Source: Malacoraja senta (taxonomy: Eukaryota). From it: DNA of 64,000 nt. The stretch is from positions 26,102,001 through 26,166,000 of the forward strand of contig CM075988.1 in the NCBI GenBank assembly GCA_038087875.1, in the 5' to 3' direction. The translations under genes and the position numbers were made by a program. The notes below the pieces were generated by a model, which was given only the letters and a program-made list of their open reading frames with translations, was not told the origin of the DNA and did no database searches. Positions 4,968 through 33,460 of the stretch are shown here, piece after piece (within the stretch, counting starts at the first letter, position 1; every line of letters starts with the position of its first letter).

Positions 4968-5245
4968 GAGATACAGCGCGGAAACAGGCCCTTCTACCCC
5001 ACTGAGTCCGCACCAACCAGTGATCCCCACACACCAACACTATCCTACACACAATTTAAAATGTTTACTGAAGCCAATTAACCTACAAACCTGCTCGTCT
5101 TTGGAGTGTGGGAGGAAACCGGAGCACCCGGAGAAAACCCACGCAGGTCACGGGGAGAACGTACAGACAAGCACCCGTAGTCGGGATTGAACCCGGGTCT
5201 CTGGCGCTGTGAGGCAGCAGCTCTACCCGCTGTGCCACCGTGCCG
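4968..5245 (-). mobile_element. HE1-like SINE
   Basis: Homologous to 1301-1605. Confidence 0.85.
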
Positions 5246-5781
5246 CCCTCAACCTCCACTGGGTGGTATGCCATGACGTGACTAGGCTTCACCCTTTAGC
5301 AGCCACCTGTGCTGCCGGCTAGTAATCAGAGATGCGGGAAGGGATCGGGGTCCGTGGGGTACGTGGGCTCTGGGTGGGGAGCAGGGGGTCTTTCCTCCAG
5401 ACACCCAGCGGAGAGAAGGTTGCTCTCCGTCCACAGTTGAAGGTTTGTGCCTCTGCCAACACTGACCAATCTGAACCATGCACGTCCCACACCGTGTCAG
5501 GGCAATGGACAACTTCCAATCCTGCATGTCGGTCTGTCAGCTGTCCTTGAGACCTTGCATGGCTTTTAATCAGCTTATGGTTGCCTTGGTTACAGTTCTC
5601 CATGGCTCTCAGCTCCTGATTAGACCTAGTTTTCCTTTTTCCCCTGGAAGGTCCTGCGGTCAACATCACCCTGGATAAGAGGACAGCCTGGATAATCTCA
5701 AGGGTGTGTTATTGTCATATGTCCCAGATAGAACAAGGTCATTCTTGCTTGCAGCAGCACAACTTACCATGGACGGCAGAG

Positions 5782-6085
5782 TTTTACTTTAGAGATACAG
5801 CATGGAAACAGGCCCATCGGCCCACTGAGTCCACGCCAACCATCGATCACCCCGTTCTATGTTATTCCACTTTCTCAGCTAATCTCTGCACATGAGGAGC
5901 AATCTTACCGAGGACAATTAACCTACAAACCCGTACGTCTTTGAGATGTGGACGGAAACTGGAGTACCCAAGGGAAACTCACACGATCACAGGGAGAACA
6001 TGCAAACTCCACACAGACAGCACCCAAGGTCATGTTTGAACCCGAGTCTCTGGCACTTGGAGGCAGCAGCTCTACCTGCTGCATC
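5782..6085 (-). mobile_element. HE1-like SINE
   Basis: Homologous to 1301-1605. Confidence 0.8.
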
Positions 6086-6349
6086 ATTGCTCCAACTCTT
6101 TCCAAATACTGAGGTACAAGCCACCTGTTACAGGAGCCCAGGGCACTTATCCAGAATATTACACTCGCTTGACTAGTCTTGTAAAGAAACACTTGTGGAA
6201 AGACATGAAATAAAACAGAAACTGCTTTAAATACTGAGAAACCAATGTGGTAATTGGAAAGAACCAGACGCTGTGGGTTTGGTCACTTTTCTCAGTAATT
6301 GTCAATTTGCAAGAATTGCCCAGGGTTCTCTGGGAATTAACAATCGATC

Positions 6350-6403
6350 GGGGTGGAAGATTGCAACCTTCACGTGGTCCACCCTGTTTCGACTAATGCA
6401 ATC
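6350..6403 (+). ncRNA. Minimal HDV-like (CPEB3-like) self-cleaving ribozyme
   Basis: P1 GGGGTGG(6350-56)/CCACCCT(6379-85) with G1.U wobble; P2 GATTGCA(6359-65)/TGCAATC(6397-403); P3 ACC/GGT; L3 TTCACGT; G6386 for P1.1; tiny P4 T-TTCG-A; J4/2 CTAA with putative catalytic C6393. Confidence 0.88.
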
Positions 6404-6484
6404 AACTCGACGTGCACAAACGGAAGATCAAATAGAACAAGTTGTCCAACAAGTTTAGGCTGTGCACGCCACACGAAAGAAGAC
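6350..6484 (+). mobile_element. Ribozyme-headed short non-autonomous retroelement (Vingi/Ingi-type SINE), full length
   Basis: Starts at ribozyme G1 and ends ccacacgaaagaaga; flanked by caatcgatc (6341-49) and caattgatc (6485-93), a probable TSD; second copy at 19915-20046. Confidence 0.8.
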
Positions 6485-6829
6485 CAATTGATCTTTCCGA
6501 AACCGTGGTGGGTAAAAACCTTGGAGAAAGTCACGGAGGGGGTCACTGACCCTCGGACTATCCTTGATCGGACTTTACTGGCTTTACCTTGCACTAAATG
6601 TCATTCCCTTACCATGATTCTATACACTGTAAATGGCTCGATTGTAATCATGTATTGTCTTTCCGCTGACTGGTTAGCACACAACAAAAGCTTTTCACTG
6701 CACCTCGGTACACGTGGCAATTAACTGAACTGAACCGAAACAATAGTATTTTTCATTTTCCTTGGAGGATACAAAAGGCTATTTTAAGTGGGCAGAATGA
6801 TGGGGAAATGACATGAGCAAAGCTTCATG

Positions 6830-7280
6830 AGTTAGACCGAGCAGCCTCAAGTCACGGCACCCCTTTGCCACGCAAGCCCGGGGGCTGCTCTGCACAACAC
6901 CGGCTGACGCATCTGGGGCTGCCTGGGTCGGGACGGGATGGAGAGACCAGTGGAAGTCAGCGGAACCATCTAGGCTACACCATTGCATCGATGACCCCAT
7001 GGACGTCCCTGGCCAAGACCTGCCCCGAAAGCAGTGGACAACCCTCAACCGCTTGGGGACAGGCATCAGGCGCTATGGAGTGGCGATGAAGAGGTGGGGC
7101 CTCGTGGACAGCGAGTGCCTCCTGCGAGTGTGGGGACAGTGGAGCACATGGTCACCAGTTGCCCCAAACACCGGCCACCGAATGATGAACGAGGTCTGAT
7201 TGACCTGGACGATGACACGTTGGCCTGGCTCGCCTCAACGGAGCTGCAGGTCTAACAGACACACGACAGAAGAAGAAGCA
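6830..7280 (+). mobile_element. 3' fragment of a Vingi/Ingi-like LINE ORF (C-terminal zinc-knuckle region)
   Basis: Frameshifted PGQDLPRKQWTTLNRLGTG...MKRWG...C.CG...EHMVTSCP...LAWL*, followed by the tail cacacgacagaagaagaag. Clade assignment is from recall. Confidence 0.7.
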
Positions 7281-7714
7281 GAGCTGGCAGTTGTACTGTA
7301 GGTACACAATGTGAAATAGTGTTCTGAGAAATGTCATCCACCTGAAATATTATCTCTTGTTCCTTTTCCCACAGATGCTGCCTGTTCTGCTAAACCCTTT
7401 ATTATTATTTCAGGAATCTCTCCTCCCCTATCGATGCTTCAACAACCTCATGTAATCCCTGTGTGAAACTCTCAACTAATGAGGAATGAAATTTCGTTTT
7501 AGTTTTAGTTAGGAGATACAGCATGGAAACAGGCTGTTTGGCTCACCGAGTCCACGCCAACCAGCGATCATGTTGCAGTTATATAAGATGTTGGTGATGC
7601 CACATTTAGAGTATTGTGTTCAAACATAACCCAATACTTAATCTTCTCTTGCAAATGTAACTTGTTATGGTTTAATTTGAGACAAACAGAAAAAAAACAA
7701 CTATCAATGTATCA

Positions 7715-32329: not shown

Positions 32330-33460
32330 GCGAGAGAGGAGGGGTGAGGGGGAGAGAGGAAGGGTGAGGGGGAGAGAGGAGGGTGAGGGGGAGAGAGGAG
32401 GGGTGAGGGGGAGAGAGGAGGGGTGAGGGGAGAGAGGAGGGGTGAGGGGGAGAGAGGAGGGGTGAGGGGGAGAGGAGGGGAGGGGGTGAGGGGGAGAGGA
32501 GGGGAGGGGGTGAGGGGGAGAGGATGGGGGGGGGTGAGGGGGAGAGGAAGGGTGAGGGGGAGAGGAGGGGAGGGGGGTGAGGGGGAGAGGATGGGGGGGG
32601 TGAGGGGGAGAGAGGAGGGGTGAGGGNNNNNNNNNNNNNNNNNNNNNNNNNNNNNNNNNNNNNNNNNNNNNNNNNNNNNNNNNNNNNNNNNNNNNNNNNN
32701 NNNNNNNNNNNNNNNNNNNNNNNNNNNNNNNNNNNNNNNNNNNNNNNNNNNNNNNNNNNNNNNNNNNNNNNNNNNNNNNNNNNNNNNNNNNNNNNNNNNN
32801 NNNNNNNNNNNNNNNNNNNNNNNNNNAGAGAGAGTGTGAGAGAGAGAGAGGGTGAGGGGGAGAGAGGAAGGGTGAGGGGAGAGAGGAGGGGTGAGGGGGA
32901 GAGAGGAGGGGTGAGGGGGAGAGAGGAGGGGTGAGGGGGAGAGAGGAGGGGTGAGGGGGAGAGAGGAGGGGTGAGGGGGAGAGGAGGGGAGGGGGTGAGG
33001 GGGAGAGGAGGGGAGGGGGTGAGGGGGAGAGGATGGGGGGGGGTGAGGGGGAGAGGAAGGGTGAGGGGGAGAGGAGGGGAGGGGGTGAGGGGGAGAGGAT
33101 GGGGGGGTGAGGGGGAGAGAGGAGGGGTGAGGGGGAGAGAGGAGGGGTGAGGGGGAGAGAGGAGGGGTGAGGGGGAGAGAGGAGGGGTGAGGGGGAGAGA
33201 GGAGGGGTGAGGGGGAGAGGAGGGGAGGGGGTGAGGGGGAGAGGAGGGGAGGGGGTGAGGGGGAGAGGATGGGGTGGGGTGAGGGGGAGAGGAGGGGTGA
33301 GGGGAAGAGGAGGGGGGGGGTGAGGGGGAGAGAGGAGGGGTGAGGGGGAGAGGAGGGATGAGGGGGAGAGGAGGGGTGAGGGGGAGAGGAGGGGTGAGGG
33401 GGAGAGGAGGGGTGAGGGGGAGAGGAGGGGGGGTGAGGGGGAGGGAGAGGAGGGGTGAGG
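32330..33460 (+). repeat. G-rich polypurine minisatellite (unit about GGGGTGAGGGGGAGAGAGGA), with an internal gap
   Basis: Directly visible tandem repeats; source of the spurious Pro-rich ORFs. Confidence 0.95.

What the first reader, a model, noticed from the sequence alone, without database searches (positions are those of the whole stretch)
6350..6484. A SINE whose head is a minimal CPEB3-like HDV ribozyme rather than a tRNA
Seen: 6350-6403 folds without a mismatch into the HDV nested double pseudoknot: 7-bp P1 with G1.U, 7-bp P2, 3-bp P3, L3 UUCACGU, and J4/2 C-U-A-A. P4 is reduced to a U-UUCG-A stub, giving only 54 nt. The probable left TSD (caatcgatc) ends immediately before G1, so the inserted copy begins at the predicted cleavage site. 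No Pol III A/B boxes are apparent. The 3' half has a cgtgcaca/tgtgcacg stem and a (GAA)n tail. Established: L3 UUCACGU followed by P1'-GU is the arrangement in the mammalian CPEB3 ribozyme, and HDV-like ribozymes define the 5' ends of R2, RTE and L1Tc/ingi retroelements. Inference: this is a promoter-less non-autonomous retroelement that cuts its own 5' end out of read-through transcripts. I cannot tell whether this family has been described in cartilaginous fish.
Basis: partly seen in the sequence, partly recalled or inferred. Interest (0 to 1): 0.92.

Follow-up and report, generated by a model that had tools for sequence, protein, structure and literature searches.

The report
Retroposon headed by minimal HDV-like ribozyme
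This is one copy of a very common 134-base jumping element whose first 54 bases fit a stripped-down hepatitis-delta-type self-cutting RNA, so it probably trims its own front end out of host transcripts, though cutting was not shown.

Summary
Window 6350-6403 fits the HDV-like nested double pseudoknot with no mismatch: P1 7 bp with G1.U, P2 7 bp, P3 3 bp, L3 UUCACGU, a C-G P1.1 pair and J4/2 CUAA. P4 is replaced by a 5-nt linker.

- **Chance:** a strict descriptor hits only this site in the window, and 1 of 400 surrogate windows.
- **Rfam:** two HDV models align end to end in the predicted register, but far below their gathering scores.
- **Family:** reads and contigs from several related organisms show thousands of pieces. 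The family's 5' edge lies at G6350, with unrelated upstream flanks. Its 3' edge lies at 6483, followed by (GAA)n.
- **Second copy:** 19915-20046(-) is 5'-truncated and has a perfect 13-bp TSD.
- **Pairing:** two metagenome contigs carry the same core with two compensatory P2 pairs.
- **Partner:** a LINE tail at 6830-7278 ends in the element's terminal 19 nt.

Cleavage is unproven. In poly(A)+ RNA about 95% of reads covering G1 continue upstream, and no read starts pile up there.

It is best filed as a ribozyme-headed non-autonomous LINE parasite, like R2 SIDEs or NARTc, and not as a Pol III SINE. It is a new variant of a known design.

This scan had already noted the same family many times elsewhere in this genome.

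The parts
6341..6349 (+). left target-site duplication caatcgatc, ending immediately before G1
   Evidence: the right copy at 6485-6493 differs at one CpG position
6350..6483 (+). whole 134-nt retroposon copy (ribozyme head, body, tail)
   Evidence: The family edges at 6350 and 6483 come from loose ends of reads and contigs.
6350..6356 (+). P1 5' strand GGGGUGG; predicted cleavage is 5' of G6350
6357..6358 (+). J1/2 (AA); 6357 is A or G across the family
   Evidence: A>G 44-69%
6359..6365 (+). P2 5' strand GAUUGCA
   Evidence: two compensatory pairs against L001/L002
6366..6368 (+). P3 5' strand ACC
6369..6375 (+). L3 UUCACGU (U20, C22, A23 and G25 as numbered in CPEB3); C6371 pairs with G6386 (P1.1)
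   Evidence: PMC4836649; primer in PMC10274809
6376..6378 (+). P3 3' strand GGU
6379..6385 (+). P1 3' strand CCACCCU; 6381 is G in about two thirds of family reads (U5.G32 wobble)
6386..6387 (+). J1/4 GU: G pairs with C6371, U lies opposite U6370 (CPEB3-type weak P1.1)
   Evidence: PMC4836649
6388..6392 (+). 5-nt linker UUCGA in place of P4
   Evidence: both Rfam HDV models delete P4 here (20 or 35 nt reduced to 5)
6393..6396 (+). J4/2 CUAA; C6393 is the predicted catalytic cytosine; 6394 is U, G or A across the family
6397..6403 (+). P2 3' strand UGCAAUC
6411..6468 (+). body: 8-bp stem CGUGCACA/UGUGCACG closing a 42-nt loop
   Evidence: also present in copy B
6470..6483 (+). 3' end cacacgaaagaaga, shared with the LINE tail and followed by (GAA)n in the family
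6485..6493 (+). right target-site duplication caattgatc
19915..20046 (-). second copy, 5'-truncated at ribozyme position 11 (no P1 5' strand); perfect 13-bp TSD attgacaaaccat at 20047-20059 and 19902-19914
6830..7278 (+). 5'-truncated, frameshifted LINE 3' end: ORF stop at 7253-7255, last 19 nt CACACGACAGAAGAAGAAG; probable autonomous partner
   Evidence: Pfam gives nothing and the Atlas gives only a faint zf-RVT lead

Best explanation
Window 6350-6483 is one copy of an abundant, promoter-less, non-autonomous retroposon. Its first 54 nt are a P4-less (minimal) HDV-like self-cleaving ribozyme.

**Proposed cycle.**
1. A copy lying in sense orientation inside any host transcript is read through by the host polymerase.
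2. The head folds into the nested double pseudoknot and cuts just 5' of G1. This class of ribozyme needs no sequence upstream of the cut.
3. The released RNA therefore starts with a complete ribozyme.
4. The reverse transcriptase of a LINE that shares the 3' end (CACACGACAG followed by (AAG)n) copies it by target-primed reverse transcription. This makes the TSDs, the variable (GAA)n tail and frequent 5' truncations.
5. Only full-length copies regenerate the ribozyme.

**Shown here:** the fold, the exact 5' edge of the family, the TSDs, the tail shared with a LINE, the abundance, and the presence of copies inside longer transcripts.

**Inferred:** catalysis, mobilisation in trans by that LINE, and how the 3' end of the RNA is formed.
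For: - **Perfect fit.** The sequence fits all HDV-like core features. All 18 pairs are paired in 4 sequences, against 27-47% for slid controls.
- **Low chance.** The strict descriptor hits only 6350 in the window and 1 of 400 surrogate windows.
- **Rfam register.** RF02682 (17.5 bits) and RF00094 (16.4 bits) both align end to end at 6350-6403 and 6348-6405. P4 is deleted and CUAA lies on the model's GCUAA.
- **P2 covariation.** Metagenome contigs L001 and L002 keep the same core. P2 changes from GAUUGCA/UGCAAUC to GGUGACA or GAUGACA/UGUCAUC. That is two pairs changed on both sides and one wobble change.
- **Family 5' edge.** In one search the 5' junctions lie at 6350 in 1159 of 1417 RNA reads, 266 of 387 contigs (X3) and 148 of 201 contigs (X1). 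Flank consensus agreement is only 0.35-0.44.
- **Abundance.** 5385 and 2305 contigs were laid in two DNA-type runs. Many runs from several coded organisms hold the element.
- **Tolerated variants.** The three high-frequency variants in the head fall at J1/2 (A/G), at a P1 position that stays paired (U-A or U.G), and at the free J4/2 position. CUAA and CGAA are, from my own knowledge, the antigenomic and genomic HDV forms.
- **Retroposition.** Both window copies have TSDs, and copy B is 5'-truncated.
- **Partner.** The LINE tail at 7260-7278 equals the family's 3' end.
- **Precedent.** Ribozyme-headed non-autonomous elements and P4-less HDV-like ribozymes that cleave in vitro are both published (PMC3414825, PMC5786205, PMC6765202, preprint 10.1101/2023.06.13.544163).
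Against: - **No cleavage evidence.** In oligo-dT RNA-seq of a related organism, about 95% of reads covering 6350-6352 carry upstream sequence (1417 loose ends against a depth of about 1494). No place where molecules begin was flagged. The test is weak. About half of the transcripts should be antisense, cleaved RNAs may be unstable or lack a poly(A) tail, and most copies are old.
- **Rfam.** Scores lie far below gathering (17.5 against 44; 16.4 against 50). The CPEB3 model gives no hit.
- **Thin covariation.** It rests on one independent lineage, and the search pattern itself fixed positions 16-39.
- **L001 and L002 flanks.** These two contigs also share about 300 nt upstream of G1, so the ribozyme is not shown to be terminal there.
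- **Conservation.** Dispersed copies are not significantly more conserved in the head than in the body: 7 of 54 against 17 of 80 variable sites, Fisher p 0.26.
- **Weak core.** P1.1 has one G-C pair, and there is no P4 to stack on it.
- **Partner head unseen.** No full-length partner LINE is in the window, so its 5' end could not be compared.
Confidence: 0.7

Rival explanations
1. The head is a true descendant of an HDV-like ribozyme, but it is kept for a role other than cutting. It could be a compact 5' structure that binds the LINE protein, helps complete cDNA synthesis, or shields the 5' end. Cleavage would be weak or lost.
For: - RNA-seq shows no cleaved 5' ends.
- P4 is absent and P1.1 is weak.
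- Kojima 2018 (PMC5786205) reports that the 5' parts of RTE and Vingi LINEs are retained even in the middle of SINEs, where cutting would truncate them. This hints at another function.
- The review PMC13708176 describes the R2 ribozyme fold as protecting the RNA 5' end.
Against: - Without cleavage or a promoter, nothing explains why the family starts exactly at G1.
- All catalytic-core nucleotides are intact, including C6393, which varies in only about 3% of reads.
- P4-less HDV-like ribozymes do cleave in vitro (preprint 10.1101/2023.06.13.544163).
Confidence: 0.15
2. The 5' end is set by transcription initiation. The head would double as an internal promoter, as the first 77 nt (Pr77) of L1Tc/NARTc are both promoter and ribozyme. 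Cleavage would be secondary.
For: - There is precedent in PMC3383444 and PMC4748587.
- TTCGA at 6388-6392 loosely resembles a B-box core (read; only 7 of 11 positions match the consensus as I recall it).
Against: - ARAGORN and Rfam find no tRNA, 5S or 7SL-like head, and I saw no A box.
- About 95% of RNA reads across G1 come from read-through transcripts. However, poly(A) selection would miss Pol III products.
Confidence: 0.08
3. The resemblance is chance. The 54 nt merely happen to fit the HDV descriptor, and the head has an unrelated origin.
For: - Helices alone occur by chance about once per window.
- Rfam E-values are only 0.12 to 1.9.
- The nested-fold energy is no better than that of shuffles (z +1.06).
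Against: - The strict descriptor hits 1 of 400 surrogate windows, and the real hit lies on the one base that is also the family's 5' end.
- L3, P1.1 and J4/2 match known ribozymes nucleotide for nucleotide.
- P2 covaries in unrelated contigs.
Confidence: 0.03

Closest known systems
R2 SIDEs and R2/R1 hybrid SIDEs of Drosophila (PMC3414825)
   Same: These are short non-coding elements made of a 5' HDV-like ribozyme plus a LINE 3' end. They have no Pol III promoter, are processed from co-transcripts, and are mobilised in trans by the LINE machinery.
   Different: SIDEs insert site-specifically in 28S rDNA, have large ribozymes with P4 and long J1/2, and are rare. This element is dispersed, exists in thousands of pieces, lives in a vertebrate, and its ribozyme is 54 nt without P4.
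NARTc / RIME / SIDER, the non-autonomous partners of L1Tc/ingi in trypanosomatids (PMC3185411, PMC4035085, PMC3383444)
   Same: They are dispersed bipartite non-autonomous elements whose first ~77 nt are an HDV-like ribozyme shared with the autonomous LINE.
   Different: There the same 77 nt are also an internal promoter, the hosts are protists with polycistronic transcription, and the tails are poly(A). The core sequence also differs. Here no promoter activity is known, and sharing of the head with the LINE was not testable.
Minimal (P4-less) HDV-like ribozymes: drz-Mtgn and theta ribozymes (preprint 10.1101/2023.06.13.544163, citing Riccitelli 2014)
   Same: Same reduced architecture: P1, P2, P3 and P1.1 with a short loop in place of P4, about 50-60 nt. 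Members of this class are proven to self-cleave in vitro.
   Different: Those are almost all in Caudoviricetes phages, often next to tRNA genes. That paper's search, which included human, mouse and protist genomes, found nearly 99% of hits in phages and only 12 in bacterial genomes. This one heads a retroposon in an animal genome.
Mammalian CPEB3 ribozyme (RF00622; PMC4836649, PMC10274809)
   Same: L3 UUCACGU is identical, positions 1-38 have the same numbering (U20, C22, A23, G25), P1.1 has one G-C plus a U-U, and GU follows P1.
   Different: CPEB3 is a single-copy intronic sequence with a full P4 and different P1 and P2 sequences. The Rfam CPEB3 model gives no match here. This is not a member; the resemblance is confined to the catalytic core.
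HDV-like ribozymes at the 5' ends of LINEs: R1, R2, R4, RTE, Ingi, LOA (listed in PMC5786205)
   Same: Same role: the ribozyme defines the 5' end of a promoter-less retroelement RNA.
   Different: Those are autonomous, coding elements. The clade of the partner LINE here was not determined. Earlier notes of this scan call it Vingi-like, a clade not on that published list.

Membership tests
HDV-like (delta-like) self-cleaving ribozymes | Nested double pseudoknot: P1 and P2 crossing, with P3 and P1.1 inside | tested here: met
   7 + 7 + 3 + 1 standard pairs, none broken
HDV-like (delta-like) self-cleaving ribozymes | G at +1 forming a G.U wobble at the base of P1, with the cut site at the 5' edge of the motif | tested here: met
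   G6350.U6385. The family's 5' end coincides with G1. The cut itself was not observed.
HDV-like (delta-like) self-cleaving ribozymes | Catalytic cytosine opening a 4-nt J4/2 (C-N-A-A) | tested here: met
   C6393-U-A-A is aligned to GCUAA of RF02682 and RF00094. The C varies in about 3% of reads.
HDV-like (delta-like) self-cleaving ribozymes | Conserved L3 nucleotides (U20, C22, G25) | tested here: met
   PMC4836649
HDV-like (delta-like) self-cleaving ribozymes | P4 helix | tested here: not met
   Only a 5-nt linker is present. P4 is absent from the published minimal HDV-like ribozymes, so it is dispensable for the class (preprint 10.1101/2023.06.13.544163).
HDV-like (delta-like) self-cleaving ribozymes | Rfam gathering score of an HDV-type model | tested here: not met
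   17.5 against 44 (RF02682) and 16.4 against 50 (RF00094). These models do not score P2 and penalise the loss of P4.
HDV-like (delta-like) self-cleaving ribozymes | Covariation supporting the helices | tested here: inconclusive
   P2 has two compensatory pairs and one wobble change, from a single other lineage. P1 position 32 alternates A/G opposite U5. P1 positions 1-5 could not be read because they lie at the ends of the alignments.
HDV-like (delta-like) self-cleaving ribozymes | Divalent-ion-dependent self-scission giving a 5'-OH and a 2',3'-cyclic phosphate | not testable with these tools
   RNA-seq read starts gave no positive signal. A bench assay is needed.
CPEB3 ribozyme (RF00622) | Match to the family model; location in the CPEB3 intron of mammals | tested here: not met
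   No RF00622 hit at E up to 10 on 73 nt. The sequence is a dispersed repeat.
CPEB3 ribozyme (RF00622) | L3 UUCACGU with a one-pair P1.1 plus U-U | tested here: met
   one search compared with PMC4836649 and the primer in PMC10274809
SINE in the strict sense | Head derived from tRNA, 5S, 7SL or snRNA with an internal Pol III promoter | tested here: not met
   ARAGORN finds none and Rfam gives no such match.
SINE in the strict sense | LINE-derived 3' end, TSDs and dispersed high copy number | tested here: met
Bipartite non-autonomous LINE (SIDE / NARTc type) | 3' end shared with an autonomous LINE | tested here: met
   The 19 terminal nt of the LINE tail (7260-7278) equal the family's 3' end when the common C variant at 6476 is used.
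Bipartite non-autonomous LINE (SIDE / NARTc type) | 5' end shared with the same LINE | not testable with these tools
   No full-length LINE is in the window. No P4-bearing or LINE-continuing variant rose above the listing limits in the reads. An earlier scan note (s1-140056) claims such a LINE head; I did not check it.
Theta ribozymes | P4-less HDV-like ribozyme | tested here: met
Theta ribozymes | Phage genome context, typically beside a tRNA gene | tested here: not met
   The context is an animal repeat. The core pattern has no match in viral or prokaryotic contigs.

The most novel reading that the evidence does not exclude
The single-copy mammalian CPEB3 ribozyme may descend from the head of this retroelement lineage, meaning a LINE and its short parasites carrying a CPEB3-type core. 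The shared features are L3 UUCACGU, a one-pair P1.1 with U-U, and GU after P1. If so, CPEB3 is an exapted transposon ribozyme, and this 54-nt form is its P4-deleted sister. My evidence shows only core identity over about 22 nt, which could equally be convergence.
Probability: 0.2. Interest if true: 0.85.

Novelty: new variant of a known kind. Interest (0 to 1): 0.62.

Why it matters
- **Ribozyme range.** It would place the smallest natural class of HDV-like ribozymes, the P4-less forms known so far almost only from gut phages, inside a vertebrate genome in thousands of copies, and give them a clear job.
- **SINE-like success without Pol III.** It shows that a SINE-like parasite can thrive with no Pol III promoter, using host read-through transcription plus self-cleavage.
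- **LINE clades.** Published work lists which LINE clades carry 5' ribozymes and which clades spawn bipartite non-autonomous elements (PMC5786205). If the partner proves Vingi-like, this would add a 5' ribozyme to a clade listed only among the second group.
- **CPEB3 origin.** The core offers a concrete candidate relative for the orphan mammalian CPEB3 ribozyme.
- **Tool use.** A 54-nt natural ribozyme that leaves a defined 5' end could also be a handy tool.
- **Host effects.** Intact sense copies in introns could cut host pre-mRNAs.

Tried and rejected
- **Rfam on the whole window and on 73 nt**. Only sub-threshold HDV-type hits appeared, with no CPEB3 hit and no tRNA, 5S or 7SL hit.
- **Nested MFE folding**. 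It is no better than shuffles (z +1.06 and +0.26), which is expected for a pseudoknot and so uninformative.
- **Read-start pile-up at G1** in two oligo-dT RNA-seq runs, tried twice. None was found. I also compared 5' with 3' junction reads (911 against 1031; 764 against 948). The small deficit is about what the lower read depth over the head than over the 3' part (roughly 0.85), expected from 5'-truncated copies, would give.
- **Search in reads and contigs for a P4-bearing or LINE-continuing version of the head** (min_share 1). None was listed.
- **Core pattern in prokaryotic genomes and viral contigs**. No match.
- **Rfam on L001 and L002**. No HDV hit at that search size.
- **Clade of the LINE tail.** Pfam gave nothing and the Atlas gave only a faint zf-RVT lead. 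The clade is left unassigned.
- **Head against body conservation among copies.** Not significant.
- **Papers not held.** Kojima 2011 (PMC3002237) and Ruminski 2011 (PMC3308841) could not be read.
- **Rejected: the P4 'U-UUCG-A stub'** as a real helix, because it competes with the U-U of P1.1.
- **Rejected: a Pol III B box at TTCGA**, because only 7 of 11 positions match and there is no A box.

Full report
**1. What is in the sequence**

One search shows that window 6350-6403 reads as follows:

| Part | Sequence |
|---|---|
| P1 5' strand | GGGGUGG |
| J1/2 | AA |
| P2 5' strand | GAUUGCA |
| P3 5' strand | ACC |
| L3 | UUCACGU |
| P3 3' strand | GGU |
| P1 3' strand | CCACCCU |
| J1/4 | GU |
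| Linker | UUCGA |
| J4/2 | CUAA |
| P2 3' strand | UGCAAUC |

P1 has 7 bp closed by G6350.U6385, P2 has 7 bp, and P3 has 3 bp. C6371 pairs with G6386 as P1.1, and C6393 opens a 4-nt J4/2.

The one point I would reword is the 'P4 stub'. Pairing U6387 with A6392 would take away the U that lies opposite U6370 in a CPEB3-type P1.1. The five bases 6388-6392 are better seen as a loop that replaces P4.

- The left TSD caatcgatc ends at 6349, and its right copy caattgatc lies at 6485-6493.
- The 8-bp stem 6411-6418 with 6461-6468 appears in the MFE fold.
- The copy ends in gaaagaaga.

**2. Is it more than chance?**

I wrote a descriptor and scanned the window and 400 first-order Markov surrogates.

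- Helices alone (P1 7 bp, P3 3 bp, P2 at least 6 bp, free linker) occur 1.15 times per surrogate window, so they prove nothing.
- Adding the P1.1 C-G pair and C-N-A-A leaves a single hit in the real window, at 6350.
- That strict descriptor gives one hit in 400 surrogates.
- The real hit also lies on the one base that is the family's 5' end (section 3), which makes chance negligible.

Rfam gives only sub-threshold matches, but they are telling. RF02682 (17.5 bits against a gathering score of 44) and RF00094, HDV itself (16.4 against 50), both align from their first to their last position on 6350-6403 and 6348-6405. Both use the predicted register, delete P4 (20 or 35 nt reduced to 5), and place CUAA on the models' GCUAA. 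These models do not score P2. The CPEB3 model gives no hit. ARAGORN finds no tRNA-like head.

**3. The family**

A second copy lies at 19915-20046 on the minus strand.

- It starts at ribozyme position 11, so it lacks the P1 5' strand.
- It has a perfect 13-bp TSD and ends in (AAG)3.
- It is a typical 5'-truncated product of target-primed reverse transcription.

Public runs from several coded organisms hold the element's 31-mers, both DNA-type and RNA-type runs.

Laying reads and contigs on the locus showed these points:

- Depth is zero in the unique flanks and very high on 6350-6483.
- 5' junctions lie at 6350 in 1159 of 1417 RNA reads (X39), 266 of 387 listed contig ends (X3), 148 of 201 (X1) and 40 of 52 (X15).
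- Upstream consensus agreement is only 0.35-0.45, so the flanks are unrelated.
- 3' junctions lie at 6483 and continue as AGAAGAAGAAG.
- 5385 (X3) and 2305 (X1) contigs were laid on the 70-nt head stretch.

It is not observed for this family.

**4. Variation in the head**

Only three sites in the head vary at high frequency, at the level of subfamilies:

| Site | Position | Variation | Effect |
|---|---|---|---|
| 6357 | 8, J1/2 | A>G 44-69% | Unpaired |
| 6381 | 32, P1 | A>G 57-89% | Consensus is G, giving U5.G32; this copy has U5-A32; both pair |
| 6394 | 45, free J4/2 position | T>G 12-38%, T>A 3-9% | CUAA or CGAA |

From my own knowledge, CUAA and CGAA are the antigenomic and genomic HDV forms, and CPEB3 has CGAA.

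The other variants run at 1-12% and are mostly CpG decay. The catalytic C6393 changes in about 3% of reads.

By rough reasoning, three random substitutions would all be structure-compatible about 7% of the time, so this is mild support only. The head is not significantly more conserved than the body among dispersed copies: 7 of 54 against 17 of 80 variable sites, p 0.26. That is what neutral decay after insertion predicts. P1 positions 1-5 could not be read because they lie at alignment ends.

**5. Independent support for P2**

A scan of metagenome contigs with a 24-nt core pattern found two AT-rich contigs, L001 and L002.

- Outside the pattern they keep GGGGUGG at the right distance.
- Their linker has one extra U.
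- Their J4/2 is also CUAA.
- Their P2 differs: GGUGACA or GAUGACA pairing with UGUCAUC.

Relative to the window, pairs 13/51 (U-A to G-C) and 14/50 (G-C to A-U) changed on both sides. Pair 11/53 changed on one side, to G.U.

On the four-sequence alignment all cells pair. With the 3' partners slid by 1-3 columns, only 27-47% pair.

There are three caveats:

- This is one other lineage only.
- The pattern fixed positions 16-39 by construction.
- The two contigs also share about 300 nt upstream of G1 and satellite-like repeats downstream, so the ribozyme is not shown to be terminal there.

**6. The likely partner**

At 6830-7278 lies a frameshifted LINE 3' end.

- Its ORF stops at 7253-7255.
- Only 23 nt follow the stop, ending CACACGACAGAAGAAGAAG.
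- The element's 3' end is cacacgaaagaaga in this copy.
- About half of family reads carry C at 6476, which makes the match with the LINE exact.

No other such tail is in the window. Pfam finds nothing in the C-terminal pieces, and the Atlas gives only a faint zf-RVT lead. I therefore leave the clade open. Earlier notes of this scan call it Vingi- or Ingi-like; I did not test that.

**7. Does it cut?**

This was not shown. I used both read-laying runs on oligo-dT RNA-seq of a related organism.

- No place where molecules begin was flagged.
- 1417 loose ends against a depth of about 1494 means about 95% of reads covering the first bases of the element continue into upstream flank.
- The 5'/3' junction ratio (0.81-0.88) is about what the lower read depth over the head than over the 3' part (roughly 0.85), expected from 5'-truncated copies, would give.

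So most element-bearing poly(A)+ RNA is uncleaved read-through transcript. This agrees with a promoter-less element, but it gives no positive sign of cleavage. The test is weak for four reasons:

- About half of the transcripts should carry the antisense strand.
- Cleaved introns and uncapped 3' fragments are short-lived.
- 5' fragments lose their poly(A) tail.
- Most copies are old.

**8. Comparison with what is known**

[quoted passage not shown] - Drosophila R2 SIDEs and R2/R1 SIDEs are exactly 'ribozyme plus LINE 3' end', and they cleave in vitro (PMC3414825).
- NARTc, RIME and SIDER share the ribozyme-bearing Pr77 head of L1Tc/ingi (PMC3185411, PMC4035085).
- A review already notes hundreds of intergenic HDV-like ribozymes with conserved downstream and variable upstream sequence. 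It also notes that some SINEs use hammerhead or HDV-like ribozymes (PMC6765202).
- P4-less HDV-like ribozymes are known and active, but nearly 99% of them are in Caudoviricetes phages (preprint 10.1101/2023.06.13.544163).
- CPEB3 has U20, C22, A23 and G25, a P1.1 of one G-C plus a U-U, and a 4-nt J4/2 (PMC4836649). A mouse primer reads GTTCACGTCGCGGCC (PMC10274809). The core here is identical in these respects.

Text searches of the held library found no paper linking HDV-like ribozymes with sharks or skates, or the CPEB3 ribozyme with Vingi. Only two held papers, a 2018 analysis and a 2026 review, mention both Vingi and HDV-like ribozymes, and the passages I read from them do not assign a ribozyme to Vingi.

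**9. Verdict**

The element is a ribozyme-headed, LINE-dependent, non-autonomous retroposon. The design is known. What is new is the P4-less 54-nt ribozyme, the CPEB3-type core, the vertebrate host and the very high copy number.

This scan had already noted the family many times on other DNA of the same genome. Those notes served as leads only.

- the surrogate-window control for chance;
- the Rfam register;
- P2 covariation from metagenome contigs;
- the quantified 5' edge of the family;
- the negative RNA-seq test for cleaved ends.

Noticed in passing
window 6547-6740: This is a different repeat family just downstream. Reads give it a sharp 5' edge at 6547/6548, with a conserved upstream continuation (agreement about 0.8), so this copy is 5'-truncated. 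It ends in an (AACTG)-like tail at about 6722-6736. In 15 + 14 RNA reads from another locus, the ribozyme element's tail is joined directly to this family (table 5c). That could be coincidence or a composite subfamily.
   Followed up: partly
L001:854-908(-) and L002:598-652(+): Two AT-rich metagenome contigs (JACSEG01...) of unknown, eukaryote-like origin carry the same minimal ribozyme core with a covarying P2. They share about 300 nt upstream and about 120 nt downstream of it. They hold internal duplications (193-nt and 416-nt spacing) and 54-67-nt satellite-like repeats. It is unclear what mobile unit, if any, the ribozyme belongs to there.
   Followed up: partly
window 6380 onward, seen in run X39: 58 RNA reads diverge after 6380 to a consensus GCCATTTCGACCAATGCGATTCAACC (agreement 0.67). 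This is a minority subfamily with a shortened P1 3' strand and an altered P2 3' strand. It may be decayed, or a distinct head variant.
   Followed up: no
window 5000-6100 and 7500-7570: These are repeated SINE-like units: 5065-5142 with 5905-5982, 5170-5232 with 6019-6081, and 5780-5849 with 7501-7570. They contain a GGGATTGAACCCGGG motif that resembles a tRNA B-box region.
   Followed up: no
window 33000-33120 and around: A purine-rich G/A satellite (GGGAGAGGAGGGGAGGGGGTGA-type units) explains the GC skew of 0.64 at 32-34 kb. Masked N runs total 2799 nt in ten blocks.
   Followed up: no
window 6374 (ribozyme G25): Among dispersed copies, G25 shows G>C (3.0%) and G>T (2.4%) on top of CpG-type G>A (6.7%). 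This is more transversion than at most neighbouring sites. The meaning is unknown.
   Followed up: no
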